64,000 bases of DNA from Asterias rubens (lineage: Eukaryota), in assembly GCF_902459465.1 (NCBI RefSeq), contig NC_047071.1:2976001-3040000 (forward strand). Reading direction: 5' to 3'. The notes beneath the pieces were generated by a model. The model ran no database searches. It was not told the DNA's origin and saw nothing but the letters and a program-made list of their open reading frames with translations. The position numbers and the translations under genes are program-made. This document shows positions 3,215-22,800 of this stretch, one piece after another (within the stretch, counting starts at the first letter, position 1; every line of letters starts with the position of its first letter).

Positions 3215-6200
3215 AGTCGATTTTTTCTACCTCCTCCCAGGCAGGACAGTTCTTTTCAGAACTGAGAAGTCTCCCGAAAATCCAAAATAGACTCCACAGT
3301 AGTAGAATATAAAGCAACAGATTTCTCAAAAATTTTGCATTGAAACTTCTCTAGCTACTGTAAACAAAAATTGGTCTTGACCGGCAGATTGTCTCACCTC
3401 TAAGTTTATTGCGTACAGCCTGAGTAGCCAGACCCCCACTCTGTTGTAGCAGCTTGATGGACCTCTGTAGAACCTCCACAGCGTGGGGAAGAAGAAGGTT
3501 CAGATGCTTGTGTAGAAGTCCCACACTAACTGAAATCTGTCATAAATTGCACAAATATTAATCATCCAACACACATATTATAAGTTATCACACAAGCGCG
3601 AGTGGAATACGGAAAAATATAGCGCTTCTGATCCCATATCCAATCTTCAAGCAAAAGTGGCTTGTGTACTGTTAACTCAATCTTCACAGTCTCCTGTGTT
3701 ATTTTTCTTATGTACCACAGACTGCCACAAATTACCATACCTTTTAGGCTAACATTGGGTGCATGGATTTTTCTGGCATTGGATGCTAGTTTATACTAAC
3801 CTCATCTTCAGCGTTGACATAACAATAAGAAACAAGGTGCTTCTGAAGAGATGAGAGTAGCTCTCGTAGATGCGCCGGGGGAGCCCCGTCATCGCAGGCC
3901 ATGGACGTCTGGGTCTTATCGCTATTCTTCTCTAGCTCTCCAAAAGCTTGTTCCTGTAACAAAAAAATAACAAGTAGCAAACAAAGATCTTAAGATACTG
4001 TGGGTTTAGATACAGCCATTAACGAAAGCCAGGCCTTGAATGTTGAATAACCCTCCTGGACTCCTCCTCAGTCGAAAAACAGGCAGTTTGCATAAATCGC
4101 GTTATCACAGGAATTAAAGAGCTGCCAATCAGGGTAATTTTGTACAACAATCAGGGAGATATTTAAATTACATTCAAGTTATGAGGAACAAGTTTCCATA
4201 ATCAGGAATAACTTCAAGTTTGTTCATCAGAATATGGAAAGATTGGTTTATTTTCAGGGAACTTTCTGCAGAATCAGGGAGATTTGGCAGCTCTGAAGTT
4301 TGCCGAAGTATGCGAATGTAGAGAGAAATTACCTGTAAATTACCTTGTGTGGCTTTGCCTATAGAGTGTAAAATATCAGAAACGACTTCTACACAGAAAA
4401 AGATAGATAAATATGTAAGATGAACATTAAGACTAAAATTGAAAACATGTATAAAGACTTACAGTATGGTAGCCAAGGTTTCGCAACAGTGTCTTCATCA
4501 ACACTTCGGCAAGATGCATGTCCTGACTGGGTGCTAGGGTCAAGGTTGAAGGGTCAGAGGTCTCGGGTTCTGGTTCCCAGTCCAAGGGGGATGTGAACCC
4601 TAGAAGGGAGGCAACGTGGAGGTTCTCCTGGAGGCTAGTCAGGATGATGCCAAGCTGCATCCTCTGTAACGGGGGAAGGAGAGAGAGGTGCAGAATGACG
4701 TCAATTGGACTCTTTTTTTGAGTGCTCTGTTTGGTTTAGGTGTATACTGTAGGCATGATATTTGGTCCTTGAAAAAAGTAGGAACATTTTATTAAGTACA
4801 AAAGGGCTGACCTATATGTTCACATGGTGTAAGCTTGAATAGACATTTCAGGCTATTTAATGACAATTTTTTAAAGATTTTTTCCAAGAGCAGAACAATT
4901 GGAAATCAGACTAGAAAATCATGCCTGATATTTAGAATTACATTCAACAAAACAGGGAAAAAGTTTCCATATTCAGGGAGATTTCCAAATTTCTTCACCA
5001 GAACATGGAAAGATTTATTTATTTTCAGGGGAACTTTCTGCAGAGTCAAGGATAGCTACCAGATTTGCCTAGAGGCTGAAAGAGATTAAGATTTGTTTCT
5101 ACCTGTCCCTTTGACAGACTGTCCCAGCGATCTGGCCCCTGAGGTAGTAGAGATTGTAGTAGCTCCATGCGTTCCCTCAACGGTGGAAGCAACAGCGGGG
5201 CACCAATGGAAAGTGTTTCACTCACAGCCTATAGTTAGAATACAATGGTATAGGTTACCGTCTAACAACAATCTCTCTGAACATTCAGGGCTCCAATTTG
5301 GGGGAAATGCCATAAGATGCTTGTGGGTAAATAAATTTAATGGATCAGAAAATCTTTTACAAGACCAAAATTAAAACGAGAAAAACTATCTACACAGTTT
5401 ACCATATAATGGGCAATAAGGGAGGCTTTATCTCATTCGTCTTTCGTATTTAATATCTTTCGATATTCAACAGAATCGTAAGATATTTATCTGATTCATT
5501 GTCCTGGCACGAGTTTGCTGACCTGAAAAAAATTCACTGGCCTCGGGCCTGCAGTCCAGTGTAAACTTTCAGCCCCGCCAAGAGTGCATTTCTTGGTAAA
5601 ACCATTTTTTGAATCGGACAAGTTTATAAAAATGCCCTTCTTGCTTGATTCAATTCAACCCAAAACACTACAAGTGAAAAAAAAAGTCCAGTAATAGAAC
5701 ATTTTGTATAGGTCTTACCTTCTGGACGGAACTGGGGGTCTTTGAGTCCATGAGACGAAACAATAAGTGCCTAAGGGGCCTTGCTTGACTGCCCAGGATG
5801 CTACTGGCTAGTCCCCCTGCCAGAGCCAACTGTAGATGTGTACAGAGCAGCTTCAGGCACAGTAACACAAAATGCTGGTGCTCCCTAGAATAGTAAGAAT
5901 TCGAATGTTTAAAAAAGAGTTTTCGGTAGAAGAAAAAAAAAATTGACTTAGTGGGGATTTGAAACTGCGACTTCCAGATTAACGTGCCAGCGCTCTACCA
6001 ACTGAGCCATCTAGCCCTAATGTTGGTGGACTGCCTATTATGTCAATACCTCAGATCCGGGGTATAACTAAGAAGCCACACAACCTGTACTTGCCGTATG
6101 GCCAGTGATCACACTCAAGTTTACGATACCATGTATGCACTTGTATACCATCAAAAGAACTTCAAAATAAATATGCTACTGGATGGGTTAACAAGGGAAG

Positions 6201-9200: not shown

Positions 9201-12200
9201 GGAATAGGAAAATAATTTATGCAGGCTTTAAAATACAAAGCAAAACCATTTGCAAAATAGCAAGTTAATGTACTGGAACATACATTTTATGCAATTGTAC
9301 AAGAAGTTTAAAGTTGAACACAAATATCTTTAGTTGTGACAACCAATCATACAGGATTTTTTTCTTTAATATAATCATGACTATTATTATTATTATTATT
9401 ATTTGTTTTCCTTGTTTTATTTCTTTATTTGTAAATTTTTAGAGGAGGCAGGGGATGTGTGTGCCCAACAATCTGGTCTTCCCATTTTTGCCAACATAGG
9501 CAACAAATCAGGGAGATTTTGTACAACAATCAACGTAAGTAGGGAACAAGTTTCAATAATCGGATAGATGGTCTAATTTGTTCATCAGACCATGAACAAA
9601 TTGGTCTATTTTCTGGAAACTTTCTGCAGAATCAGGGAGAATTTTTTTACCTTTGATGATGAAATCCTTGAGATGACGTGACTGTCAAAGTTGAGTTTCT
9701 TGAGCTGCGTCTGGTTGTTGGAATCGCCGAGGCCCAGCCTGCCATAACTCCCCTTCCCACAGGCTCTAACGGTACCATCCGCTGATATGACAAAGGTGCA
9801 GTATTGGCCGGCCTCAACCTGGAGAGTAGCAAGACGAATTGGGAATACTAATAATAATCAGCGTTTCAAATGTTTTCGAAATTGTGCATCACAGTATCCC
9901 ATTCATAAGTGGAGGCAATTAAATTGTAAGCCACGCCCAATTCACATAGATGCCTCCACTGATATTTGCTATTTTTTTTCTGATAAATGCAAAAAAGATG
10001 AACACAGTCGGCTCTTGATATAAAGAGCACTGTTAAGAAGAGGTTCTGCTTTAATATGAAGAGAACATTCTAAAGTCCCAAATCTCATTTCTACTTTGTG
10101 TTTCTTTGTTTTGCTGTCCTCTTATAACTCCTGTTACAAAGAGATAATTTGGCCAGTCCCAGCGACCTTGTTTTAACATTAGTCGACTGTAATTGGACTT
10201 TGCAAAACTTTCTGCTTAAAGCCATAGGACACTTTCTGAACAAAACAAAAATTAAAAGTTCACAGAATTACAAAAAACTTACAGGGTTTACAGAAGGTAA
10301 CGGTGAGAGACTTCCCTTGAAATATTATTCCATGGAATGCTTTACTTTTTGAGACAACATTAAAACAAGTATCAATTCTCGATATCGAGAATAACAGATT
10401 TATTTTAAACACATGTCGTGACACGGCGAAACGTGCGAAACAAGGATGGGTTTTACCGTTACTTTCTCCCAACTCCAATGACCGATTGAGCCTTAATTTT
10501 CACAGGTTTGTTATTTTATATATAAGTTGTGATACAAGAAGTGTGGGCCTTTGGACAATACTGTTTACCGATGTTGTGCGATTGCTCTAAGTAGCTCTTT
10601 GACATTGTGCCCTACACACCTGTTGACTTTGAGCAAACAATCCGGTCAACTTGGGCTGGATGATCTTCTCCTGGCTCCCCTCTGCTAGCTGGTGGCTGCT
10701 GTTACTTCCCCACACGTACACCTCGCTGTTTTCAGAGACGCTGATATTGTTGAGTCGCCTCTCGCTGGGGCAGACGCAGGTGCGGGCGTACTCCATGGCA
10801 AGGCGAGATACCTAAAAGGTTCATCAAAGAGGAAATAAATAACTTAGAATTGGAAATACATGTCCTGTATGCTTCGTTTTTGAAAGGGCAAGGGCACCAA
10901 GGCATTTTCTCCTTGGTAAAAGGCACCCTATGAGGAAATTGTAAGTTTCTACTGGAGCATTTCAAGGGCACCAAGGCAATGATGACCAAGGGCCATGGAG
11001 GCAATTGCCTTTGCTGCCTCTGTGAAGTATCAGGCCTGGAAATATCATTGTGAGGTCTGTTTGTAGGATATTTTTGTGTGTATTATCAACACATTTAGGT
11101 TTTTAATGCAAGAGTTGATTAGTTCAAGACATAACAGGCCTAAATAGTACAATATAAAGTCTTACTTCCTCAATAAGACACAGCGCAGCTTGGTACAAGG
11201 GGCAATGGCCATCGTGTTGTTTCAGCTCAGATAGCACTGTCCCTCTGTCAGATGATGAACCCTGTGAGTAAAATATCAAGATATGATCAGTTACTGTTAA
11301 TTGTCATGAGGACAGTAATAACCTTCTCGTGAAAATATTTGTAAATTTACAGTTTTAATTAAGTAAGAGAGGTTTTGCAAGTCTATGAATACATGTGTGT
11401 TCACAAGACACATAATTGCAGTGTCTGATTGGTCAGGTCAGCTAAGTCGGTCAGGTCACCCAGGTTGGTCAGTTTGTTCAGGTCGGCTATGTCGGTCAGG
11501 TCAGCTTGATCAGGTCATTCATTCAGGTCAGTCAGGTCGATCAGGTCAGTTAGATTTGTCAGGTCAGTGAGGTTAGGTTGATAACGGTCAGGACGGTCAG
11601 GTCAGTCAAGTGAAGTTGGTCAGATCGATCAGGTTGGTCATATATAGAAAAGTTTGCGGTAACACCATGTAATAACAATCTCTCAATGAGTTGGGGTGGT
11701 TCTGAAAAGAACCATTGGATTAACTCGACGTTTCGATCAGTATGCTCTGATCGTCTTCTGGAGAATGCTGGACTCTGATGCTGCATGCTGCTTAAGTACT
11801 GGGCGGTGGATCAGCGGTGATGCATGAAGGCGGGAAATAGAGGCGGGAAGTGAACTCGATGATGCGTGGTGAAACCTGTTGTGGAGCCTAGGGTGGTGTG
11901 TGGGGGGTGTGTGCTCACTGAACCGTGTCAGTAGGAACAAGCACAGGGGATAGTGAGGGTGTGGGGCCTAGGTGACTGAGGGTATAGATGACCCAAAGCA
12001 GTCTAATGGTTGGGGCCTAGGGGGTGACCGTGGATATAGAAGATCCATTGGTCGGGAGAAGGGGGAGCCAGATGTCGCTGATGTGGAAGCCGATGTCCTG
12101 GGGTACGGTGTCATGCTTGTGGATCTCTATGGCCTCTCTGATGCGTCTAGGGTGCCACGCCTGGATTGGAGCGATGATTTCTGCTGCTTCCCAGTTCACT

Positions 12201-13994
12201 CGGTGGTCAGTGATGTGGGAATGCTTGACGATGGCGGATTTATCGAAGTCCCCCCTCCTTCCGTGTGCTCGGTGTTCCTTAAGTCTAGTGGGAAGGTTAC
12301 GCCCGGTTTCCCCGACATAAACCTTACCACATTCGCATGGAATGCGATAGACTCCGGCACGGGTGGAGGGGTCCTTCTTGTCCTTGGCGGATTTATCGAA
12401 GTCCCCCCTCCCCCTCCTTTAGACTGCTTTGGGTCATCTATACCCTCAGTCACCTAGGCCCCACACCCTCACTATCCCCTGTGCTTGTTCCTACTGACAC
12501 GGTTCAGTGAGCACACACCCCCCACACACCACCCTAGGCTCCACAACAGGTTTCACCACGCATCATCGAGTTCACTTCCCGCCTCTATTTCCCGCCATCA
12601 TGCATCACCGCTGATCCACCGCCCAGTACTTAAGCAGCATGCAGCATCAGAGTCCAGCATTCTCCAGAAGACGATCAGAGCATACTGATCGAAACGTCGA
12701 GTTAATCCAACGGTTCTTTTCAGAACCACCCCAACTCATTGAGAGATTGTTATTACATGGTGTTACCGCAAACTTTTCTATATCTTACTTCCACCATGCA
12801 AAGTTTCAAATCCTACAGGTTGGTCATGTTGATGTCGGTCAGGTTGGTTTTGTCTGTCAGGTCTCTCAGGTCGCTAATGACCTGACTGGTCATAACGACC
12901 TGACAGGTTGGTTGGTAACCACTGACTGGTCGGTCAAGTCATTCAGGTTGGTCAGTCAGTAGGTCAGTCTTTAAGCCTTCCAAGGAGAAGCTTTGAACCT
13001 TGGATCTAGAACGGCAGCTCAGAATTTTCAATAAAATCAGAGATTTACTTACAGTGGCTCTACGCATCTGACCCAAAACATTGGAGAAAAAATCAAAAGA
13101 GATGACACTGTAGTTTCGCATCTCATCTCCTTCGACTGTACCCACTCGGGAGATGCTACTGCTGGCAGCTGCCGAGGAGCCGAGAGCCATTTCTACCCAG
13201 TCAAGAAGATGTTGAAGAGACCCTCTTTGGGCAGCTAGACCCAAGACAAGCTGACATGCAAGCTGCTTGCCGTTTTGGTCAGCACCGGAGTTGGGCATCG
13301 TTGCCGATTTCAGAAACATTGTCACCTGTTTCAAGCATTCAGTACCAAGACATGGTATCTTACTCTCATTAGCGAGCGACAACGGCGGTAGAGAATCCAA
13401 GACGCTCATCGCTGTCTGAAGAACATCGTTACAGATGCTAGGGTTCCCTGCGGGAACGGTTTGCATCCAGTTCTGCCTTAGGAGGGCGAAGAGAAGACTA
13501 AGTCCAGTGCGGACACCCATCTCAACCAAGGCGTCTGTGCCGAAGGTAACCTGCTTCATGGTGGTTTTCTCATCGACTGTCCCGGCATGGGCCTGCTGAA
13601 GCCGCAGCTGCTGCTTGACCTTCTCCTTGTCGTGGAACTTGCTGGAGATGGCGTGGAAGATGCGGCGCAGGACAGCCAGCCGTTTCTGAAGGGCGGAGGC
13701 GAATGGGGACTCTGAGCATACTGTGCGGGCGAGGTTGAGCTGATTGGAAAGGAGGGCTTCCAAGAAGTGCTCCTGCTCCTCAGGCGAGGGTGGCTCCCTT
13801 TCATAGTCGGGCAACTGGGGTCCTTGGAGGTGCAGACTGGGGCGTGGCGCACTGATAACCTCCTTGTTTGTGACAAGGCGGTCATAAAGCTCAAGGGTAC
13901 CCTCTCTACTAGCTACTAGACCCCAATCCTCTGTCACCCACGATGCATTTAGATGTTCCATCCATTTCAACTTCATAGACATGTTCGAGGACAT
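74..13994 (-). CDS. HERC1: HERC1 E3 ubiquitin ligase, 5' portion (N-terminus, first RCC1-like domain and following region); continues beyond left edge of window
   Basis: N-terminus MSSNMSMKLKWMEHLNASWVTED...GVRTGLSLLFALLRQ and RCC1 repeats (EVYVWGSNSSHQL, FSWGDGDYGKLGHG, WSFGGGDNGKLGHGD, VYAWGNNAMGQCGQG) match HERC1 as I recall it. GT-AG exons traced: 14014-13053 (ATG 13994), 11261-11166, 10811-10620, 9818-9651, 9055-8818, 8262-8119, 7937-7810, 7364-7220, 7033-6862, 6424-6290, 5884-5719, 5228-5103, 4663-4463, 3953-3801, 3537-3398, 3097-2906, 1777-1553, 839-666, 185-74. Confidence 0.97.
981..1160. mobile_element. Miniature PLE-derived insertion with hammerhead motif (1062-1101, minus) and 23-bp inverted repeat
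   Basis: 990-1012 and 1109-1131 are perfect inverted repeats. The insertion ends in the same ATGCAAAGTTTCAAATCCTAC tail as the 11.6-12.8 kb element. The flanks 966-980 and 1161-1175 match at 12 of 15 positions, consistent with a degraded TSD. Confidence 0.75.
1955..2061 (+). repeat. Two-copy ~52-bp tandem duplication
   Basis: CTTATCAAGCA.AATTC..AGAATT.TCATTGCGGTTTGAACAATAATAACC occurs twice. Confidence 0.85.
2228..2592. mobile_element. TTAA-TSD MITE, Kolobok-like (family A)
   Basis: TIR AGCCATTGGACCCTTTCGGTA at both ends, flanked by TTAA (2224-2227, 2593-2596). The purine start fits Kolobok better than piggyBac. Confidence 0.85.
2709..2881. mobile_element. GGCCCAATTTCAT-TIR MITE (Harbinger-like superfamily; at least 10 related copies in window)
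   Basis: TIR GGCCCAATTTCATA(A/G)AG at both ends. Related full or partial copies are near 8430-8550, 15427-15615, 16968-17200, 25323-25600, 27422-27701, 28240-28422, 35526-35764, 39988, 50657-50856, 54047-54209, 61587 and 63938. The superfamily assignment is inferred. Confidence 0.75.
4118..4295. mobile_element. hAT-like MITE (AGAGCTGCCAA TIR); relatives at about 4880-5075, 9490-9645, 59270-59412
   Basis: AGAGCTGCCAA...TTGGCAGCTCT termini and a shared ACTTTCTGCAGAATCAGGGAG internal motif. Confidence 0.65.
5950..6020 (-). repeat. tRNA-derived SINE head (family also at 36612-36675 and 43278-43340, plus)
   Basis: GGGCT...AGCTCAGTTGGTAGAGC A box with ACGTTAATC and a degenerate B box. There is no intact cloverleaf. 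Confidence 0.65.
10220..10586. mobile_element. TTAA-TSD MITE, family A, inverted older copy
   Basis: Reverse-complement similarity to 2228-2592 along its length. The right end is degenerate. Confidence 0.75.
10865..11040. repeat. Interspersed repeat family (GGGCACC...CCTATGAGGAAATTGTAA); relatives at about 30565-30745, 54665-54815, 58335-58490
   Basis: Recurrent shared internal sequence ending in CAGGCCTG. The class is uncertain. Confidence 0.6.
11427..11641 (+). repeat. Degenerate (GGTCA)n low-complexity tract, continuing at 12816-12968 beyond the PLE insertion
   Basis: Dense repeats of GGTCA/AGGTCAG on both sides of the PLE. Confidence 0.85.
11724..11763 (-). ncRNA. Minimal hammerhead ribozyme motif, mirror copy (sense to HERC1 pre-mRNA)
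   Basis: Exact reverse complement of the 12662-12701 motif. Confidence 0.7.
12017..12382 (-). pseudogene. PLE GIY-YIG endonuclease C-terminal fragment
   Basis: Open frame GVYRIPCECGKVYVGETGRNLPTRLKEHRAHGRRGDFDKSAIVKHSHITDHRVNWEAAEIIAPIQAWHPRRIREAIEIHKH...ISDIWLPLL, ending at the stop at 12017. Confidence 0.9.
12662..12701 (+). ncRNA. Minimal type I hammerhead ribozyme motif (variant core) in PLE arm
   Basis: CTC-CAGAAGA-C-GATCAG-AGCATA-CTGATC-GAAAC-GTC-GAG: stem I, core, stem II hairpin and the palindromic ACGT substitute for stem III. Activity is untested. Confidence 0.7.
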
Positions 13995-16900
13995 GTTGGT
14001 GAAGTGTCACAGGGCTGTGGTGCAAGGATAAAATGAAGGGGGAAAGAAATGTCCAATAACAACGCATTACTCAACCACAAGCGAAATTAATTATTGGGCT
14101 TCGGGATGAGGGCTCATTAAAAGTTTGAGGACATCTGTGTTAATGTAAAAATTGAAACACTCGACTCAGATCTGCTCGTCTGGCTCCAGTCCTAGTCATG
14201 CATTGCTTGTCATTGAATGACATTGTCATTGAATGACATTATTAGGCTCCAGACTGTGTTTGAATCCTTCCAGGTTCAAACACTGCTTATTACACACTTA
14301 ACAGATACATGACCGCAGATGTCAACATTTAATTTTAAATATTTTAAACAGGGTACCGTGCTCCAACTGGGTCTAGTTCAATACAACTGGGTCGAGTAAA
14401 ACCATCAACAGACATTTAATCATGGTTGCAAATTCATGAAATAAAAGTATAAACAAAACAAAAATATGAATAACAATACCCAACAGTCAGACAGTTAAGT
14501 TCAGGAACGTTAAAACATAGTCTTGACACTTGCGGCCTTAAATAAACAAGACACATAAAATAAACCATTCTTGCTTCGTCCTTCAGCATGTTTTCGTCAG
14601 ACGGGAAGTATAAAAAGCCGGCTGGTGTCCTGTTGTACTAATGAACTACACTCAGCCAAATGCAAAGACCTGGTAAACTTATCCCCTTTGTTTATAACAA
14701 TCAAACAAACAAATACAAAGACCCCGTAAACAAAACCATGAAAACTTATCCCTGGTATCCCCTTTGTTTAGTTACATTTACAATACATGGAGGAGGGACA
14801 AATATGGTTAATAGTAGTAACACTCCTGGAGTGTCTGACAGTGCAACTTATCCTCACCTACAATGAGTGAGTCTGTACTCAACATGTTCAAATAAATTTA
14901 AAAAAGGGAAAAGATAAGATGAGGAGAACTTCTGGAGTTAAAGTTTTGAAGGTCGTTTGACCTTTTTAAACATCAAAATTTTCATCACAAAAACTCACCA
15001 AATAAATTGCCAGGTATGCTCATTACTTAGAGTGAGATTCGGACGTTTGATCGATGAGAACCAAAGACTCATGAGTATGCATTATGGAAACTCCCACTGT
15101 TTTTGTCGGCTTGTTCATTAACGTCTGCAGGATTTTTCTTCAATGCCCATTTCCAATTCTTTTAGACACAAGTAAAAATACAAACGACTTTTCAACAGCG
15201 TTCAAAACACCAATATTCGTGCTAGAGTCAATCAAAGTTTTGGTCAAATACCGCAAACGACCGTCAAAGCCGGTTTGTTGTGGGGCGGGGAGGGGGGTGG
15301 GGGGTTCTGCTATTATGTTCTTTTTATTATTCCGCTTTCTAGTAGAGAATTCCCTTATGGTGTCAAGGTTGAACAAAGAATTATCTTGTGGGGTCCATTG
15401 TTCCATTGTGTAAAAGACCCAACAAGGGCCCAATTTCATGTACAGCACAAAAACTTTCCAAGCAAAGAAAAGTATTGCTTAACAGAAACAGGTTACCAGC
15501 CAGCCAAAATAACAGTAAGTTAACACATTGTTCTGACTGGTTCCCCACTCAATTTTGCTTAGCAAAGAATTGGTCAAGAATTGGTTTCTGCTAAACAGGT
15601 TTGTGAAATTGGGCCAAGGGCCAAAATGAGCTCTACCTTGCTTGATCCCCTGAAAACCTTTCTGTGGCAGAGTTGAGATGACTTCACTGCATGAGGGACA
15701 TTTTTCACATAATTGCGTCATAATTTCTACATTAATTGAAAAGTTAATACAATTAACAACTAAATGAGTTTTGAGATGTAGGCCTAACCACTTTCTTCTA
15801 AACAATCAATTTGATGAAAATCAATTTCTATAAAATGACAGGTTTTATTTCTTGCAATGAATTGAATTGACTCTTTGGAAAGCTATTTTGAACAGAGTCA
15901 GGGATCTTGGATGGCGCTTCTTAAAAGACCTAAAAGTGACCTTGCTAGGGCTTTTCTGGCAGGTAAAATACAACACAGGTCATTGAACATCTTACATTTA
16001 CAAATGAAGAAAGGGGTTCATCTCAAAAGTTGTTCAGCTGGTTTTTTTCATGAACTTCTGAAAATAAATTTGATTCAATTTTTTGTTTTAATAAAACGCT
16101 AGGAAAGTTTTATTTATTTCTCATCAAACATTACACTTTAAACAGAAATATTTCGAGGGATGTTATCTACTATCATCATCCTAAGAATGTGTAAGTATTA
16201 TGTAAATCTGTGATCTTAGACAAGTTTTATTTTACCAATTCTGTAGTTGCCTTTATTAATGTACTTGTTATGAGCCTCTCTGGTGATAATTTTGTATTAT
16301 TTACATAAATTTAAAGGGCTGCTGCAGTGAATTAAAAAAAACAGTTAATTTTGCTGTCATTTATTTCTGATATATGTATTGAACATGTGTTTTGTTTTTT
16401 CCCCCGACATATCTCACTTGCGTAATTAGCAAATAAGTCATGCCCCCTCTTTTGTGGAATGTTACCGCCCCCCTACCATCGACGTCACGTCGGGAATTCA
16501 AACATATCGTCGGCAAAAAAGAGTCTGGTCCCTAACTACATGCGCCTAGGTACCAGGCCACACAGTGCACACGTCTCTATATGCACACAGCCAGGGGGCC
16601 CGACAGCTCGGGTTACCGACATGACGTCACGTTTATGCAAATGAAGGCTCCCTTTAAGGGGCGGGGTGGGTTCCCCTATCTCTTGAAAACCATTTTTTAA
16701 AATACTTGCGCATTTAATAAAAAATAATAAAAAATATTCCAGGTTTAAAAAGTCATGTTTAATCGTTTAAATTATTTAAAAAAACACTGCAGCCACCCTT
16801 TACACTTATTTGGAGTGGGGGGTTTCTTGCAACACACAGTAACTTTTTAATTCAACAATGTGCACTGTGCAAGGCAAAGAAGTAAATGTCATGTAGTTAT

Positions 16901-17465
16901 GCAGGTTGCATCTTGGTTTTCTGTTCTGATGGCTTGTCCCAGAAGTACTTTGTTTTTGTGAACACCGCGGCCCAACTTCATGGCTCTGCATGCTTACCGA
17001 AAGCGAAGAATCAGCGCTTAAGGAAGCAGGGAAGGGTTAAGCTAGGAATTTAAGCTTGTGCGACTGCGTACTCCTTGTTACTTAGACATTCTATGCTTAC
17101 AGTTACACAGCTAGCACAGAAATGCGGCGCTTGCACATTAAGCGGAGAATGGTGATCGCAAGTGCAGAATTTGGTGGTAATAACCATAAAAATGGACCCT
17201 GGTGACTGATCATCTTGGTTTCTTTCTCCAGATTTTCCTAATATTGTCTAAAACTACCTGTGTCTTACTCTTTATTAAATGAAAAAATGTAGTCTTGGTG
17301 CAAAATGATCGTTATGTGCGCAGCGAGGAGAGTGCGAGCAGGGGATCGCGATAGTTGAGTGATAATGTGAATACATGTAGCAACGTCTTGCACCAAGACT
17401 ACCAGAATGTTGTGAGAACGAGTTCAGTGTTCTTTGTCTGTTTAGGGTTCTCTGTCAGCAACGCT

Positions 17466-18752
17466 TCAGCCTTCTTGAAAAAGTTGGTGCATGTCAGCGG
17501 CATCTTCAGCTGTCACAGCTGTCGGTTCTGGCATGACCGACGTGGAAGAAGTACCTTTGGTTGGAGTGCGGAAGCTGGATTGTTCCACAGAACATCGGTC
17601 AACTGGGTAGATGCCACTCCGTCTGAAGGATTCGTGCAAGTTACTTGGCGTGAATGCAGATGTATATGCCTTGCAAGCTAACGCACACAACGGGGAGTGT
17701 TTGGCAACACCAGGTGGTGCTTTTTTCCGCAAATCATTAAGGATGTTTTCAAACGGTCCAAAACATCCAACGTCCATGGGCTGAAGAATATGCGAAGTGT
17801 ATGCCGGAAGTACAAAAAGGATGATGTTTCTCTCCTCCCGTGCCCATTGAATTAGCGATAGCGAAACATTACACTTATGTTCGTCATACAATACCAAGAT
17901 AGGGTTTTCTGGTGTTGCAGGAACGCGGTATTTGCTGAAGTGGTCAAGGTATCTCTTAAAAGTGTCTGAGCTAGACTTGCCGGAGTCGCTGGCCGCCCCT
18001 GCAGTACCGGTAGTACAACCTTTCAAGAATTCCTTTCGCATACGGGGTCCCTTGAATATGAAAAATGGGGGTACGGCCATGCCAACAGCATTCCCACATC
18101 CAATTACTGTTGTAGTGGTTGATTCATCCATGGTATCTTCTGGAGGCGTTGCTTGATGTGAGGGTAGTACAATACATGATGGAGGTTTATGGTACTCAGT
18201 GATGCTCTTCTCATCAACAATGTAGATGGCCTGTGGTCGATCTACTAGGTTATGTTTCTCTAGAATATGCTCCAGTTCGTCAAAGTATTTATTGACCGTC
18301 TCAAGAGAGGTGGCTTTAGTTCGCATTATCTCGAGAGATTTAGGTTTCTTTACCTTGAGCTCTGGCCAGCGTTTCATGAAGCTATAAAACCACTGCAGTG
18401 AGAGGGGCTTATCGGACTTCTTTTTCAGTCCATGGCGGACAGCCAAGTCAGTAGCAAGTGATGTTACTTCAGTACGGCTGTACTCATAGCCAAAGGAAGC
18501 CATTAACTCAATGTATGTTACTAGTGTCTGTTCCTCTTCCACGCTCAACAGGGGATCGGGTCCCGACTTAGTGCATTGCAACTTTTTTATTCTTCCATTG
18601 GCTCTATCATACAGAGTAGAATATGGAACAGCATAAATTCTTGAAGCTTTTTTGATAGAGAAACCCTCACCAGTTACAGCCGCTAACGCTTTGTCCAAAT
18701 TATCTGGTGAATACTTTCGGTAAGTTTCCTTCCCTTTACTGGCCACCGCCAT
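17466..18752 (-). CDS. pogo/Fot1-like (Tc5/CENP-B HTH + DDE_1) transposase-derived protein, 428 aa, inside HERC1 intron 1
   Basis: Uninterrupted ORF. It has an N-terminal psq-type HTH (SIKKASRIYAVPYSTLYDR), a CENP-B-type HTH (LSVEEEQTLV...QWFYSFMKRWPEL) and DDD-type motifs IYIVDEK / VLYDEHK / LQPMDVGCFGP. The acceptor TTTTCTTTTTCTTTTACAG lies directly before the ATG, and a minus-strand AATAAA is at 17271-17276. Confidence 0.9.
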   Translation of the reverse strand: MAVASKGKETYRKYSPDNLDKALAAVTGEGFSIKKASRIYAVPYSTLYDRANGRIKKLQCTKSGPDPLLSVEEEQTLVTYIELMASFGYEYSRTEVTSLATDLAVRHGLKKKSDKPLSLQWFYSFMKRWPELKVKKPKSLEIMRTKATSLETVNKYFDELEHILEKHNLVDRPQAIYIVDEKSITEYHKPPSCIVLPSHQATPPEDTMDESTTTTVIGCGNAVGMAVPPFFIFKGPRMRKEFLKGCTTGTAGAASDSGKSSSDTFKRYLDHFSKYRVPATPENPILVLYDEHKCNVSLSLIQWAREERNIILFVLPAYTSHILQPMDVGCFGPFENILNDLRKKAPPGVAKHSPLCALACKAYTSAFTPSNLHESFRRSGIYPVDRCSVEQSSFRTPTKGTSSTSVMPEPTAVTAEDAADMHQLFQEG

Positions 18753-19458
18753 CTGTAAAAGAAAAAGAAAATAGTTGCCATTAAAAACAAATCAAATGTG
18801 GAATAAAAAGCTCATTTAATTGATGTTATATGGCTATTTGATTAGAATCCTAAGATTATCACAGGGCATCAGTACTTTCAGGTTCGTTCTGCTATCGCCT
18901 CCACAACCGTGGATTCAATAGCGGAAACGAACCTCATTCATAGTCTGTAGGAGTAAACATCCCCCCTCCCCCTGTACTACTAGTAGTAGTTGCGATACTG
19001 TTACCTCCTCCCGACGGCAAAGGAGGGTTATGTTATCGCACCTATCTCCCGCCCCCGCCCAGCACAAGAACATTTTCATAACATTCTGTTTGTTACAGTG
19101 TTAGACATATTTCACATTTGGTTTCAGGAGAAAAAAAACATCTCACTGTTTACACGTTTATAATATTAGAACTAATTACATCAGTTTGCAGTTAATCAAA
19201 GAAAAGAGAAAAACAATGTTTATTTTCACTTATATTTTAAATATTTTATACGCCTTGGAATCCCAAATAGAAACCACATCACGTGATCTATCTGGTGACT
19301 GAAAGAGAATGCTGGCACGCATGACTGACTTTCGAGGTTGGCTGTTTCTTTGACTCATTTGAATCAAATTTTAATCGTTTATGTAATCATGCAGCTAATG
19401 CACAAGTAATCTATGAACAATAAGTTTATCATTTTATAAACAATTGAGCGTCACTTAC

Positions 19459-19560
19459 GCCAGGAAACTTTACTTTCAGCATGATGAACTTGGGGGTCGA
19501 AAATATATGACGGTACTGGCTGGCACACCAACGTGTTTGAAAACACTCATGACGCGGTGA
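19459..19560 (-). other. Putative first (5' leader) exon shared by HERC1 and the intronic transposase
   Basis: Strong minus-strand donor GC|GTAAGTGA at 19459/19458, next to the divergent promoter region. The upstream boundary (TSS) is approximate. Confidence 0.6.
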
Positions 19561-19866
19561 CGCTCGTTGACGTACGAATAATAAGTTTGGCACTCACATT
19601 CAGTAGATCGGTCTCTAGTGGGCAAATGAGGGCGCTACTTGTATTTATTTATTTGTTTAACCTCGACCACTCGTTTCACACTGACGTGCATGTTTGCTCG
19701 TTCCCCCGTTATCGGCTGATGGAGGTTACGTCTGCGAAGGATTAAGTGTATGTGTTTGTTTACCTTTCAGTTTCCGGCTATCGTCTGCTAAGTCAAGGAG
19801 GAAGGGTGATCAAGCAAAAATTGCGTTTTTACTTTGCCAGCCAGGTAGCTGACCATAAAATCAGAA
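19560..19866. promoter_or_regulatory. Putative bidirectional promoter HERC1/transposase (minus) - G6P epimerase (plus)
   Basis: Head-to-head arrangement with about 300 bp between the putative first exons. The region is CpG-richer than its flanks. Exact TSSs are not determinable. Confidence 0.6.
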
Positions 19867-22800
19867 TGTCGGCTGACCGTGTGGTACTAGAGAGGAGCAC
19901 AGATACAAGCTTGACAGTTCATTTGTTTGGTAAGCTGATAATTTTACAGCGTTCCGGATCCATACAGTCCAGCAGAGCATGGAGCAATAAGGTTGACCTG
20001 AAAAAAAGTTGCCGATTGGTCCCAACTCAACCGTACACTGGCACGCCCACCCACAGTCCACACACCAACACAGAATGCTAAAAGTTGACAATCAATTTGA
20101 AGCTAAATACTTATTTCATTGTGTTGTCTGTTTTGTTACAGGTGCGACTGTGGTTTCATGGAAATGTAACGGATCTGAAATTTTATTTGTTAGGTAATTA
20201 TTTTATTTTGTTGCTATAAAAAGAAAGAACAAGACGCAGACAGAGTATTATATTATTAAATGAAATGCCACTTTCCCTTATTGACATTATTTCTGTTTTT
20301 CTTGGAAACGTTATTTATTATTGTGTTTTTTTGCAGCAAGAACTCTTTATTCAACAACAAGAAAGCCATCCGAGGAGGCATACCTGTGTGTTTCCGTAAG
20401 TTTCTTTAAGCACCCGTCAACAAGTTGATACATAAATGCTCTTGGGGGGTGGGGGGAGTGGGTAGACTAGAGACCCAGCCAAGGGCTTGCTCCCCCAAAT
20501 GGGAAGGGAAACTTGTTACCAAAAGGAGTGTTTGAACATTAGGCCATTAAAAGGAGAGGGGGTGGGGTTTTTTAGTTCACACCACCAAAACCAGAGACCA
20601 ATTATTTTGCTTATGCAAAAAAGTAGCTAAGCATATTGAGTACAATTTGTTACTGGCATCCTGCTAATCTCTGCTTTGCAGGAAAAAATGCTCAGCAATA
20701 TTCTCTGCAGTAAAAAATACGGTCTTAAAGGAATGTTCACAAAGTTCCCTTACAAGTTTATGAACAATTTGTCACCATGTTTACAGAAGTTATTTTAACT
20801 GTTTTTGTAAAAATCACAATTTCAGCTCAATTTGGACCATGGGACCTTGGACCTCAACACGGCTTTGCAAGAATTACAACATGGACCATGGAACAAGAAC
20901 CAAAAGTAAGAGACAACTTCTTGGAATCATTCAAACATTTTTAATGCTTATACCCATCATTGGTTTTCTTAGTAACAGCTGGAAGTAGCCCCGTAAATAG
21001 TGCTCAATAGGCTGGACAAAAGAAGCGGAGGAAGTCCAGCGTATTGGGCACTATTTGTGGAGCTAGGCAGGAAGGTGCTGGGGTTGTGCCTTTGGTGATA
21101 CAAGCACAGAATTTTGTACACAGGTCAGAGTATATATACTCTCTGACCTGTGTACAAAATTCTGTCATAAGTAGGCATGATATTTGTCCTACTTTAGTCT
21201 GATTAACAACTTATGCCTTTGGACAAATCAGAGAAATTGTAATTAGCCTGAAAAGTCTTTTAGAGCCTTGACCATGTGTGCACGTGGGTCAGTCCTTGTA
21301 CACAATGAAATGCTCCTCCTTTTTTCCCAAGGACCAAATATCACTCCTGCTAAAGATCTTTGGCTCAAGGGCCATAGCTTTTTTAAAGTCTGGTACTTAA
21401 TTTAACAGTGCAAGGCTACAAAAAAAGCATTTCCTGTGACAATACTGTTTTAGTTCTCATACTAATGCTTAAAAAATTTCTGCTGCAGACATTGAGTGGT
21501 GGTGATGTGTGTGCTGTGTTTACACTCAATGACAATGAGGAAACAAGAAAGATGTGGAACCATGGGTGAGTTATGTATGGACTCAACTTCACTGAGTTGT
21601 GTATTGTGGCCACTTTTAAAGACACTGGACACTATTGGTAATTGCCAAAGACTAGTCTTCACAGTTGGTGTATTTCAACATGCATAAAATAACAAACCTG
21701 TGAAAATTTGAGCTCAATCGGTCATCGAAGTTGCGAGATACAAATGAAAGAAAAAACACCCTTGTCACACGAAGTTGTGTGCTTTCAGATGCTTGATTTC
21801 GAGACCTCAAATTCTAAATCTAAAGTCTCGAAATCAAATTCGTGGAGAATTACTTCTTCCTTGAAAACTACATTACTTCAGAGGGAGCCATTTCTTACAT
21901 TTTTTTTTCTACTATCAACCTCTCCCCATTACTCATTTATACCAAGAAAGGTTTTATGCTAATAACTATTTTGAGTAATTACAAAATAGTGCCCACTGCC
22001 TTTAAAGTAGGTGTTCCATAAAAATATGAACTTCAGTCATTATAGCTCTTCTTTCTTTTGAATTCAGGTTCAAGGTGACTTACACCCTAACACTGAAGGA
22101 AACAGAGTTTGTCAGTGATTTTGTTGTGAACAACACAGGTAACTATATCACACATTCTATTTTGTGCATCACTGTGGAGACATTTTGTTTTGTCCTTTGT
22201 CTCTGTATTAACAACCTCTCGTAGACCCAATTCCTTGTGGAGCGCCCAAGTCTTTAGAATTCCCTTATGGAGGCCTTTTGGGTTTCCCTTTTCTTTTTTG
22301 TTCTCGGTCTTCATAGTACACTTTTTTATTTAAATTTATCTTTTTTTTCATAAACAATCTTTATTCTATATTCGAGTAAAAGTTTGTCTAGATTCTTTTT
22401 TTAAGTATGTCAAAAACAAGATTTCTTTCAACTACTTTCATTTGAATTTGACTGAGTTAAAGCCCGGTTCATACTTCCTGCGAATGCGAATGCGATACGA
22501 ATGTAGACGTCACAAATTCGCAACGAAAAATTCGCAGCAGTTCAACTCTGCTCAACTCACTTGCGAATATCGCTGTGAAAGGAGGGTTGTGTTGTCAAAT
22601 TCCGTCAAATTCGCTTTGCATTCGCATTCGCAGGAAGTATGAACCGGGCTTTATGATTTTTGTTTTATCATTTTGATCCCATTAGGTGAAGACCCATTTA
22701 GTTTCACAGCCTTGTTACATACCTATCTCAGTGTTAGTGATGTCACAAAGACAACTGTCAGTGGTCTGAAGGGACTCAAGTATGTTGATAAGGTAAGGAA

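What the first reader, a model, noticed from the sequence alone, without database searches (positions are those of the whole stretch)
17271..19482. Candidate domesticated pogo transposase expressed from the HERC1 promoter as an alternative terminal exon of intron 1
Seen in sequence: an intact 428-codon pogo/Fot1-like ORF, co-oriented with HERC1, lies between the putative leader exon (donor at 19459) and the HERC1 ATG exon (acceptor at 14014). A strong polypyrimidine/AG acceptor sits directly against its ATG, an AATAAA lies about 190 nt after the stop, and I found no flanking TIR pair. Established: transposases captured as alternative 3' exons of host genes are known (PGBD3 in ERCC6/CSB), and pogo-derived genes are repeatedly domesticated (CENP-B, TIGD, JRK). 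Inference: one promoter may yield either HERC1 or a DNA-binding transposase-derived protein through a splice/polyadenylation choice. I do not know of this being described for HERC1.
Basis: partly seen in the sequence, partly recalled or inferred. Interest (0 to 1): 0.78.

Follow-up and report, generated by a model that had tools for sequence, protein, structure and literature searches.

The report
Stand-alone domesticated pogo transposase gene
A former jumping-gene enzyme in the common starfish has become a fixed, expressed, selected single-copy gene lying just upstream of HERC1, but it has its own first exon and is not an alternative product of the HERC1 gene.

Summary
The 428-codon pogo-type ORF (17466-18752, minus strand) is real. 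The window is Asterias rubens. The ORF is exon 2 of the RefSeq gene LOC117295274 (436 aa, "uncharacterized protein"); the first 8 codons lie in an exon at 19482-19459.

- The gene is single-copy in a DNA run and has lost its 3' inverted repeat and the family's C-terminal Cys/His module.
- It sits at the same GALM-HERC1 position in A. amurensis.
- Its divergence there is 2.1% with no indels, against 5.6% and 11 indel events per kb in flanking non-coding DNA.
- Changes favour third codon positions.
- It is spliced and expressed in RNA runs of both species.

The HERC1 part is not supported.
- The HERC1 ATG exon (acceptor 14014) is joined to a leader exon at 14999-~15107 in three RNA data sets. 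That exon lies downstream of the ORF, so the ORF is outside HERC1 intron 1.
- The "leader exon" at 19459 is the transposon's own first exon. Intact elements in Patiria and Haliotis have the same 8-codon exon and intron.
- The gene lies head-to-head with GALM.

It is a new, lineage-restricted member of a well-known kind.

The parts
19459..19544 (-). Exon 1 of the pogo-derived gene (LOC117295274): 5' UTR plus ATG at 19482 and 8 codons (MLKVKFPG), donor GT at 19458. The 5' limit is a minimum.
   Evidence: RefSeq proteins of A. rubens (436 aa) and A. amurensis (424 aa) start with these 8 residues. The first 86 letters of an X2 contig lie beyond 18752, and X2 depth in bin 19461-19660 equals that contig covering 84 nt (inference). 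The 24 coding bases are identical in A. amurensis.
19487..19566 (-). Degenerate remnant of the transposon's 5' terminal inverted repeat and subterminal repeat
   Evidence: It aligns with the 5' ends of the Patiria, Haliotis and Gigantopelta elements: a GCGTCACCG...GTTTTC block and an ATTTTCGA.CCCCAA block. About 100 nt of 5' UTR are missing relative to them.
18753..19458 (-). Intron of transposon origin (706 nt). It carries the family-conserved E-box TCACGTGAT at 19286-19278.
   Evidence: RNA depth is near zero at 18861-19260. It is homologous to the Patiria intron. The E-box lies 158-174 nt from the donor in Asterias, Patiria and Haliotis.
17466..18752 (-). Coding part of exon 2: 428 codons with HTH_psq, HTH_Tnp_Tc5 and a DDE_1 catalytic core. 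D180, D290 and D327 (ORF numbering) are retained.
   Evidence: RNA contigs start exactly at 18752.
16798..17465 (-). 3' UTR, minimum extent. It contains AATAAA (17276-17271), a 114-nt hairpin repeat (17289-17402) and a high-copy repeat (about 16970-17200).
   Evidence: The X2 contig covers 16798-18752 and the X10 contig covers 16773-18010. Repeats.
17432..17491 (-). Out-of-frame remnant of the ancestral C-terminal region (FFKKAEALLTENPKQTK). It shows that the ORF was truncated by a frameshift.
   Evidence: tblastn with Patiria P0002 residues 441-460, in a different frame from the ORF.
16902..16961 (-). Possible further remnant of the transposase C-terminal coding region (weak)
   Evidence: blastn E = 2.8e-4 and tblastn E = 0.056 against Patiria.
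14999..15107 (-). HERC1 exon 1 (non-coding leader), donor after 14999. The 5' limit is a minimum.
   Evidence: A joint 14014/14999 (CT..AC on the plus strand, GT..AG on the minus strand) appears in X2, X10 and X27. The X10 contig reaches 15107 and X27 reads reach at least 15119. This stretch is 97.5% identical to A. amurensis.
14015..14998 (-). HERC1 intron 1 (984 nt)
   Evidence: joints table.
12939..14014 (-). HERC1 exon 2, with ATG at 13994
   Evidence: The HERC1 coding sequence starts at this point in both Asterias annotations.
19866..20081 (+). Start of the divergently transcribed aldose-1-epimerase (GALM-like) gene. Its ATG at 19866 is 384 nt from the pogo gene's ATG.
   Evidence: Gene calls with the Aldose_epim family, coordinate mapping, and X27 molecules beginning at 19783.

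Best explanation
This is a stand-alone host gene of Asterias rubens, LOC117295274, derived from a pogo-superfamily DNA transposon. The transposon inserted between GALM and HERC1 before A. rubens and A. amurensis split.

The copy is immobilised. Only a degenerate 5' terminal repeat survives. The 3' terminal repeat is gone, and so are the last ~180 residues of the ancestral transposase (a KKR/VGGKAITE motif and a Cys/His-rich module). These were lost through a frameshift, deletion and repeat insertions.

The gene keeps the transposon's own two-exon layout: an 8-codon first exon, an intron of about 700 nt with a conserved E-box, then the main exon. Transcription starts at or just upstream of the transposon's 5' end, within about 240 nt of the GALM start and diverging from it. 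The product is 436 aa.

Inferred: the protein acts through its two N-terminal helix-turn-helix domains as a sequence-specific DNA-binding factor. Its RNase-H-like core is folded but altered, and probably no longer supports transposition.

HERC1 is a separate transcription unit. Its own leader exon at 14999-~15107 is spliced to the ATG exon at 14014.
For: Identity:
- The window is 100% identical to A. rubens LR699101.1.
- The ORF equals residues 9-436 of XP_033633721.1.

Transposon origin:
- Pfam finds HTH_psq, HTH_Tnp_Tc5 and DDE_1.
- The predicted structure has a Mos1/SETMAR-like catalytic fold, mean pLDDT 78.
- Patiria miniata has two copies 97.5% identical over 3.4 kb in unrelated places.
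- The Patiria, Haliotis and Gigantopelta elements have terminal inverted repeats.
- The Patiria and Haliotis elements have the same 8-codon exon and intron.

Stationary and single-copy:
- DNA-run depth is 177 over the ORF, against 137-224 in unique flanks.
- No 3' terminal repeat was found.
- The locus is syntenic in A. amurensis.

Selection:
- The ORF core has 26 substitutions in 1224 nt and no indels. Non-coding flanks have 223 in 4014 and 46 indel events (p = 1e-7 and 8e-7).
- The rate at non-synonymous sites is 0.3 of the non-coding rate (p = 4e-8).
- 21 of 32 changes fall at third codon positions (p = 2e-4).
- Listed within-species variants are 5 synonymous to 1 non-synonymous.

Expression and splicing:
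- RNA contigs start exactly at 18752 and carry upstream letters; the intron is empty. Depth is comparable to or above HERC1 in X2, X10 and X27.

Separate from HERC1:
- The 14014/14999 joint appears in three RNA data sets.
- A. rubens RNA depth is about zero at 15661-16060.
Against: - Selection was measured on one pair of close species only. Classical dN/dS is 0.47 and is not significantly below 1 on its own (p = 0.06-0.09).
- The 19459/18752 joint was not among the 15 joints listed by read laying. It rests on contig ends, depth arithmetic and the two RefSeq models.
- The transcription start and the polyadenylation site are not mapped.
- The DDD triad is intact, so residual nuclease activity cannot be excluded.
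- Contigs drop rare isoforms, so a minor chimeric transcript with HERC1 is not excluded.
- The polymorphism list shown by the tool was truncated to the best-supported sites.
Confidence: 0.75

Rival explanations
1. One promoter and leader exon (donor 19459) serves both genes. It splices either to the pogo exon (acceptor 18752, then polyadenylation) or to the HERC1 ATG exon (acceptor 14014), as in PGBD3-CSB.
For: The two genes are co-oriented and adjacent. All the splice sites named are real. Only 15 of 39 joints were displayed, and contigs miss rare isoforms. X27 shows a few reads in the unique intergenic stretch 15661-16060.
Against: - Acceptor 14014 is joined to 14999 in X2, X10 and X27, and no joint to 19459 is listed.
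- HERC1 contigs end at 15071 and 15107, at different points, as expected near a transcription start.
- The 19459 exon is the transposon's own first exon.
- A. rubens RNA depth is about zero between the genes.
- RefSeq has separate gene models.
Confidence: 0.04
2. A non-functional relic: an immobilised transposon copy that is transcribed only because it landed beside the GALM promoter. Its open frame survives by chance or through a locally low mutation rate.
For: - The C-terminus is truncated and differs between the two species through a 4-nt indel.
- 13 of 84 family-conserved positions are changed, against a median of 4 in relatives.
- dN/dS of 0.47 is not significant alone.
- Synonymous divergence (3.6%) is somewhat below the intron level.
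Against: - There are no indels in 1224 nt against 14 expected (p = 8e-7).
- Substitutions at non-synonymous sites are 3.4-fold fewer than in the flanks.
- Third-position excess holds in both divergence and polymorphism.
- Non-coding DNA immediately next to the ORF (intron 6.2%, 3' UTR 6.0%) evolves at the normal rate, so a local mutation cold spot is unlikely.
Confidence: 0.1
3. A still-active transposase source. The fixed copy supplies enzyme in trans to non-autonomous relatives, and the signal of constraint reflects recent activity rather than a host function.
For: - The DDD triad is retained.
- A short block inside the element's intron (about 19300-19400) is multi-copy in the DNA run, with depth 1049-2643 against about 180, and is expressed from paralogous copies.
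- The family is recently active in Patiria.
Against: - A stationary copy cannot be kept intact across a speciation by selection at the transposon level.
- Residues invariant in 82 relatives beside the catalytic aspartates are replaced (N178I, G291E, H295N, H318Y; also W259K, which is 91% conserved).
- The C-terminal module is lost.
- The family's subterminal repeat motif has no match in the 64-kb window, against 1.3 expected by chance.
Confidence: 0.08

Closest known systems
Vertebrate pogo-derived host genes (CENP-B, TIGD1-7, JRK/JRKL, POGK, POGZ), as reviewed in PMC7386202 and PMC7325037
   Same: A stationary single-copy gene derived from a pogo-superfamily transposase. The N-terminal helix-turn-helix DNA-binding domains and the DDE_1 core are retained, the terminal repeats are lost, and the coding sequence is under purifying selection.
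   Different: - It is independent and much younger. It is shown only in the genus Asterias, whereas the closest relatives in Patiria are still mobile elements.
- It derives from an HTH_psq + HTH_Tnp_Tc5, DD35D-type lineage (DD36D here) with a C-terminal Cys/His module that this gene has lost.
- It keeps the transposon's own mini-exon and intron.
- The selection evidence covers only about 5% neutral divergence.
PGBD3-CSB (ERCC6) fusion: a transposase captured as an alternative 3' terminal exon of a host gene
   Same: A transposase ORF preceded directly by a strong acceptor site, co-oriented with a large host gene.
   Different: No exon, promoter or coding sequence is shared with HERC1. The ORF lies upstream of HERC1 exon 1, not inside an intron. 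Its upstream exon is of transposon origin and supplies its own ATG.
Intact pogo-type elements of Patiria miniata (XP_038072690.1, XP_038076927.1) and of molluscs such as Haliotis and Gigantopelta
   Same: 45-65% protein identity, the same 8-codon first exon and intron position, the same intronic E-box, and homologous 5' terminal sequence.
   Different: - Those elements are about 3.4 kb with both terminal repeats.
- They encode about 606 aa including the C-terminal Cys/His module.
- They occur in two or more copies in unrelated genomic contexts.
- The Asterias gene is single-copy, truncated to 436 aa, lacks a 3' repeat and deviates at 13 of 84 conserved positions.
SETMAR (Metnase) and the Mos1 transposase catalytic domain
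   Same: The predicted catalytic core has the same RNase-H-like fold (Foldseek probability 1.0, TM by target 0.5-0.64). SETMAR is also a domesticated Tc1/mariner-group transposase.
   Different: Sequence identity is only 12-15%. The superfamily differs (mariner, not pogo). There is no fusion to a host domain here.

Membership tests
pogo superfamily transposase (IS630-Tc1-mariner group) | N-terminal helix-turn-helix DNA-binding domains (psq / CENP-B / Tc5 type) | tested here: met
   HTH_psq E = 8e-11. HTH_Tnp_Tc5 E = 6e-4, just under the Pfam cut-off. Helical bundles are modelled at pLDDT 80-90.
pogo superfamily transposase (IS630-Tc1-mariner group) | DDE_1 RNase-H-like catalytic domain with a DDD triad, about 35 residues between the last two aspartates | tested here: met
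   DDE_1 E = 1e-12. D180, D290 and D327 align with the family's conserved aspartates. Spacing is 36 here and 35 in relatives. The fold matches Mos1, SETMAR and Sleeping Beauty cores.
pogo superfamily transposase (IS630-Tc1-mariner group) | Terminal inverted repeats with target-site duplication flanking the gene (a mobile element) | tested here: not met
   There is no inverted-repeat pair around the gene. Only a degenerate 5' remnant survives. No 3' repeat scores above shuffled controls. Relatives do have the repeats.
Domesticated (host-co-opted) transposase gene | Single, stationary copy at an orthologous position in different species | tested here: met
   DNA-run depth over the ORF equals that of unique flanks. 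The order GALM / gene / HERC1 and alignable flanks are shared with A. amurensis. Only two congeneric species could be compared.
Domesticated (host-co-opted) transposase gene | Purifying selection on the coding sequence at the host locus | tested here: met
   - Divergence is 2.1% against 5.6%.
- There are no indels against 14 expected.
- The non-synonymous-site rate is 0.3 of the non-coding rate.
- Third-position excess has p = 2e-4.
- Polymorphisms are 5 synonymous to 1 non-synonymous.
- Pairwise dN/dS of 0.47 is not significant alone.
Domesticated (host-co-opted) transposase gene | Expressed as a processed mRNA | tested here: met
   Spliced RNA contigs appear in X2 and X10, and raw RNA-seq reads of the sister species in X27. 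The intron is empty.
Domesticated (host-co-opted) transposase gene | A demonstrated host function | not testable with these tools
   This needs protein detection, DNA-binding assays and loss-of-function experiments.
Host gene / transposase alternative terminal exon (PGBD3-CSB type) | The transposase exon lies inside an intron of the host gene | tested here: not met
   HERC1 exon 1 is at 14999-~15107 and intron 1 is 14015-14998. The ORF at 17466-18752 lies upstream of both.
Host gene / transposase alternative terminal exon (PGBD3-CSB type) | The upstream exon and promoter are shared with the host gene's main transcript | tested here: not met
   Acceptor 14014 joins 14999, not 19459, in three RNA data sets. 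The 19459 exon is homologous to exon 1 of the mobile elements. Rare isoforms are not excluded.

The most novel reading that the evidence does not exclude
The 436-aa protein is a genus- or family-specific DNA-binding regulator, or a repressor of its own transposon family. It would still recognise the family's subterminal TTTTCGATC-type repeats. Relic pieces of the element are scattered through the Asterias genome: the block at about 19300-19400 is 6-15 times single-copy depth and is expressed from paralogues. These would form its binding network. The gene would keep the transposon's own exon 1, intron and E-box as its regulatory architecture while drawing on the GALM bidirectional promoter.
Probability: 0.15. 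Interest if true: 0.5.

Novelty: new member of a known kind. Interest (0 to 1): 0.3.

Why it matters
The result removes an attractive but wrong idea, that a HERC1/transposase splice choice exists as in PGBD3-CSB.

What remains is a clean young example of transposase domestication in an echinoderm. The mobile ancestor family is still identifiable in another starfish, including its terminal repeats, its mini-exon, its intron and an intronic E-box.

Young cases with a living mobile relative help show which steps come first:
- loss of one terminal repeat;
- loss of a C-terminal Cys/His module;
- changes beside, but not in, the catalytic aspartates;
- landing next to a host bidirectional promoter.

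The result also fixes the 5' structure of A. rubens HERC1: leader exon at 14999-~15107 and a 984-nt intron 1.

Tried and rejected
- Inverted-repeat search around the ORF found no credible terminal-repeat pair.
- Local alignment of the 3' ends of the Patiria, Haliotis and Gigantopelta elements against 14900-17470 scored no better than shuffled controls.
- tblastn with the C-terminal 190 residues of six relatives found only two short remnants and no trace of the Cys/His module.
- Rfam on 14000-20200 gave no match. The multi-copy, expressed block in the intron is therefore not a known RNA family.
- Pfam on the relatives' C-terminal 177 residues gave no family.
- The family's subterminal repeat motif has no match in the window, against 1.3 expected by chance.
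- The PDB sequence search matched only the LCoR psq-type HTH.
- Paper searches for a description of this gene, or of echinoderm pogo domestication, found only general pogo reviews.
- Orthologues in other Asteriidae could not be searched. The protein collection holds only the two Asterias RefSeq proteins in this cluster. No hit lies between 65% and 96% identity, but the collection's coverage of starfish is partial, so this blank is not evidence of absence.
- The look-up of sequencing runs was busy three times before it answered.
Full report
**1. What is in the sequence**

An ATG-to-stop ORF of 428 codons lies at 17466-18752 on the minus strand. Pfam finds HTH_psq (E = 8e-11), a weak HTH_Tnp_Tc5 match (E = 6e-4) and DDE_1 (E = 1e-12). 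That is the domain set of pogo-superfamily transposases.

- A polypyrimidine tract and AG abut the ATG.
- AATAAA lies at 17276-17271.
- ATG-CTG-AAA-GTA-AAG-TTT-CCT-GGC followed by GTAAGT lies at 19482-19459.
- The ORF at 12939-13994 is the N-terminal coding exon of HERC1.

**2. Where the window comes from, and existing annotation**

The best protein hit is a 424-aa "uncharacterized protein" of Asterias amurensis, at 96% identity. Its 90% cluster also holds XP_033633721.1, "uncharacterized protein LOC117295274 [Asterias rubens]", 436 aa.

- Residues 9-436 of that protein are identical to the window ORF.
- Its locus is 100% identical to the window over 10 kb.
- The window is therefore A. rubens LR699101.1.
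- RefSeq already models a two-exon coding sequence (19482-19459 joined to 18752-17466) as a gene separate from HERC1. It lies between an aldose-1-epimerase (GALM-like) gene on the other strand and HERC1.

**3. The "leader exon" belongs to the transposon**

Full-length relatives of about 606 aa begin with ML(R/K)(V/I)K(F/L)P, the same peptide as the 8 codons at 19482-19459. These relatives are from Patiria miniata, Haliotis and other molluscs.

- In Patiria and Haliotis the peptide is encoded by the same 8-codon mini-exon, followed by GTAAGT and an intron of 516 or 316 nt.
- The Asterias and Patiria copies are alignable at DNA level across exon 1, the first ~210 nt of the intron, and the last 75 nt of the intron plus the ORF.
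- All three introns carry TCACGTGAT 158-174 nt from the donor.

The family is a true transposon.

- Patiria has two copies that are 97.5% identical over 3.36-3.38 kb in unrelated contexts.
- The Patiria, Haliotis and Gigantopelta elements carry terminal inverted repeats built on a GTTTTCGATCG-type motif.

In the window a degenerate 5' terminal remnant survives at about 19563-19487. About 100 nt of 5' UTR are deleted relative to the intact elements. No 3' repeat can be found.

**4. Transcripts**

I laid two A. rubens RNA-like contig sets (X2, X10), raw RNA-seq of the sister species (X27) and a DNA contig set (X3) on 13861-19860.

(a) HERC1 has its own leader exon.
- The HERC1 acceptor at 14014 is joined to a donor at 14999, skipping 984 nt (GT..AG on the minus strand). 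This appears in X2, X10 and X27.
- The contigs continue to about 15071 (X2) and 15107 (X10). X27 reads reach at least 15119.
- The leader exon therefore lies downstream of the pogo ORF, and HERC1 intron 1 is 14015-14998.

(b) The pogo gene is spliced as the annotation says.
- Pogo-gene contigs fit 18752-16798 (X2, 2049 nt) and 18752-18049 plus 18010-16773 (X10).
- Both stop matching exactly at 18752 and carry 86 (X2) or 8 (X10) further letters.
- X2 depth of 9.42 in bin 19461-19660 equals that contig (depth 22.4) covering 84 nt. I infer that the 86 letters are 19544-19459.
- RNA depth over 18861-19260 is near zero.
- The joint itself was not among the 15 of 39 rows displayed. This step rests on contig ends, depth and the two RefSeq models.

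(c) The contigs run through the AATAAA at 17271 and end where high-copy repeats begin. The 3' end is not mapped.

(d) Unique sequence between the genes (15661-16060) has depth 0-0.9 in the A. rubens RNA runs.

(e) GALM's ATG is at 19866, and X27 molecules begin at 19783. The two genes therefore diverge from a region of at most about 240 nt.

(f) In the DNA run the ORF contig has depth 177, against 137, 215 and 224 for unique flanks. The ORF is single-copy.

**5. Selection**

The locus is syntenic and alignable with A. amurensis.

| Region | Substitutions | Divergence | Indel events |
|---|---|---|---|
| ORF codons 1-408 | 26 of 1224 nt | 2.1% | 0 |
| Intron, 3' UTR and downstream spacer | 223 of 4014 nt | 5.6% | 46 |
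| HERC1 exon 2 | 18 of 1064 nt | 1.7% | 2 |

- Fisher's test on substitutions, ORF against non-coding: p = 1.3e-7.
- Indels: P(0 | 14 expected) = 8e-7.
- Non-synonymous sites against non-coding: odds ratio 0.29, p = 4e-8.
- Synonymous sites do not differ from non-coding (p = 0.17).
- Substitutions by codon position are 6, 5 and 15 (p = 0.03).
- Six listed differences between the A. rubens runs and the window all fall at third positions: five synonymous and one non-synonymous.
- Pooled, 21 of 32 changes are at third positions (p = 2e-4).
- Pairwise Nei-Gojobori dN/dS is 0.47 and is not significant alone.

Non-coding DNA touching the ORF diverges at the normal rate, which argues against a mutation cold spot. 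A fixed locus cannot be preserved by transposon-level selection. The constraint is therefore at host level and on the protein.

**6. What has changed in the protein**

- The aspartates D180, D290 and D327 are kept.
- 13 of 84 positions conserved in at least 85% of 82 full-length relatives are replaced, identically in both Asterias species. The median for relatives is 4, and the Patiria element has 2.
- The replaced positions include N178I, W259K, N261S, G291E, S294C, H295N and H318Y, which lie beside the catalytic residues.
- The last ~180 residues of the family are missing. These hold a KKR...VGGKAITE motif and a Cys/His-rich module that has no Pfam match.
- An out-of-frame remnant lies at 17491-17432, and perhaps another at 16961-16902.
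- A 4-nt indel at 17527 gives the two species different short tails.
- The AlphaFold model (mean pLDDT 78) shows two helical DNA-binding bundles and a Mos1/SETMAR-like core. Residues 1-18 and 406-436 are disordered.

**7. Interpretation**

Shown: a single-copy, immobilised, spliced, expressed and selectively constrained pogo-derived gene, transcribed divergently from GALM and separately from HERC1.

Inferred: it functions through DNA binding, and its catalytic activity is impaired. The altered catalytic neighbourhood and the lost C-terminal module fit this.

Rivals are given in the Rival explanations section with their probabilities.

**8. Comparison with known cases and novelty**

Domesticated pogo transposases are well known: CENP-B, TIGD1-7, JRK, POGK and POGZ (PMC7386202, PMC7325037). 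This is an independent, young, echinoderm-specific case. I found no paper on it. It fails every tested defining feature of the PGBD3-CSB type of capture.

I did not test that note. No such paralogue appeared among the 120 best protein hits, so any relationship is distant.

Verdict: a new member of a known kind. Interest is modest.

Noticed in passing
window 19286-19278; L002 about 10196-10204; L003 about 5183-5215: A palindromic E-box, TCACGTGAT, sits 158-174 nt into the transposon's intron in the Asterias, Patiria and Haliotis elements (three tandem copies in Haliotis). The surrounding intron is otherwise poorly conserved. It may be an element-borne intronic enhancer or promoter element.
   Followed up: partly
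window about 19300-19400: This block inside the pogo gene's intron is multi-copy in the DNA run (depth 1049-2643 against about 180). RNA contigs and reads covering it carry a TGA insertion at 19342, so they come from paralogous copies elsewhere. There is no Rfam match. Its nature is unresolved: dispersed relics of the element, or an unknown small RNA.
   Followed up: partly
window 17289-17402: A 114-nt hairpin repeat with perfect 15-nt inverted ends (GTAGTCTTGGTGCAA / TTGCACCAAGACTAC) lies in the 3' UTR. It is multi-copy in DNA. A 74-nt internal deletion joint (17308/17383) is present in both RNA and DNA runs, so it is probably a MITE with an indel polymorphism.
   Followed up: no
window 15261-17260: The spacer between the pogo gene and HERC1 exon 1 is packed with very high-copy repeats, with DNA word depth up to about 2e5. 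It includes a MITE-like unit with 25-nt inverted ends at 16305-16329 and 16785-16809.
   Followed up: no
L002 9866-13241 and L006 9866-13221 (Patiria miniata): Two copies of a ~3.4-kb pogo-type element are 97.5% identical. Both have intact 606-aa two-exon transposase genes, in unrelated genomic contexts (one inside an intron of a CS/TPR gene). The family looks recently active in Patiria.
   Followed up: partly
Proteins P0002, P0003, P0004, P0006, P0014, P0020, last ~60 residues: The mobile relatives end in a conserved Cys/His-rich module (CCxC...WAQC...C.HW.HL.FC...F.CPCH) with no Pfam match. It may be a PHD-like or other zinc-binding chromatin or DNA-targeting domain of this transposon lineage.
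   Followed up: partly
window 14999-15107 and 14015-14998: A. rubens HERC1 has a short non-coding first exon and a 984-nt first intron. The pogo gene was more deeply covered than the HERC1 5' end in two of the three RNA data sets (X10, X27).
   Followed up: yes
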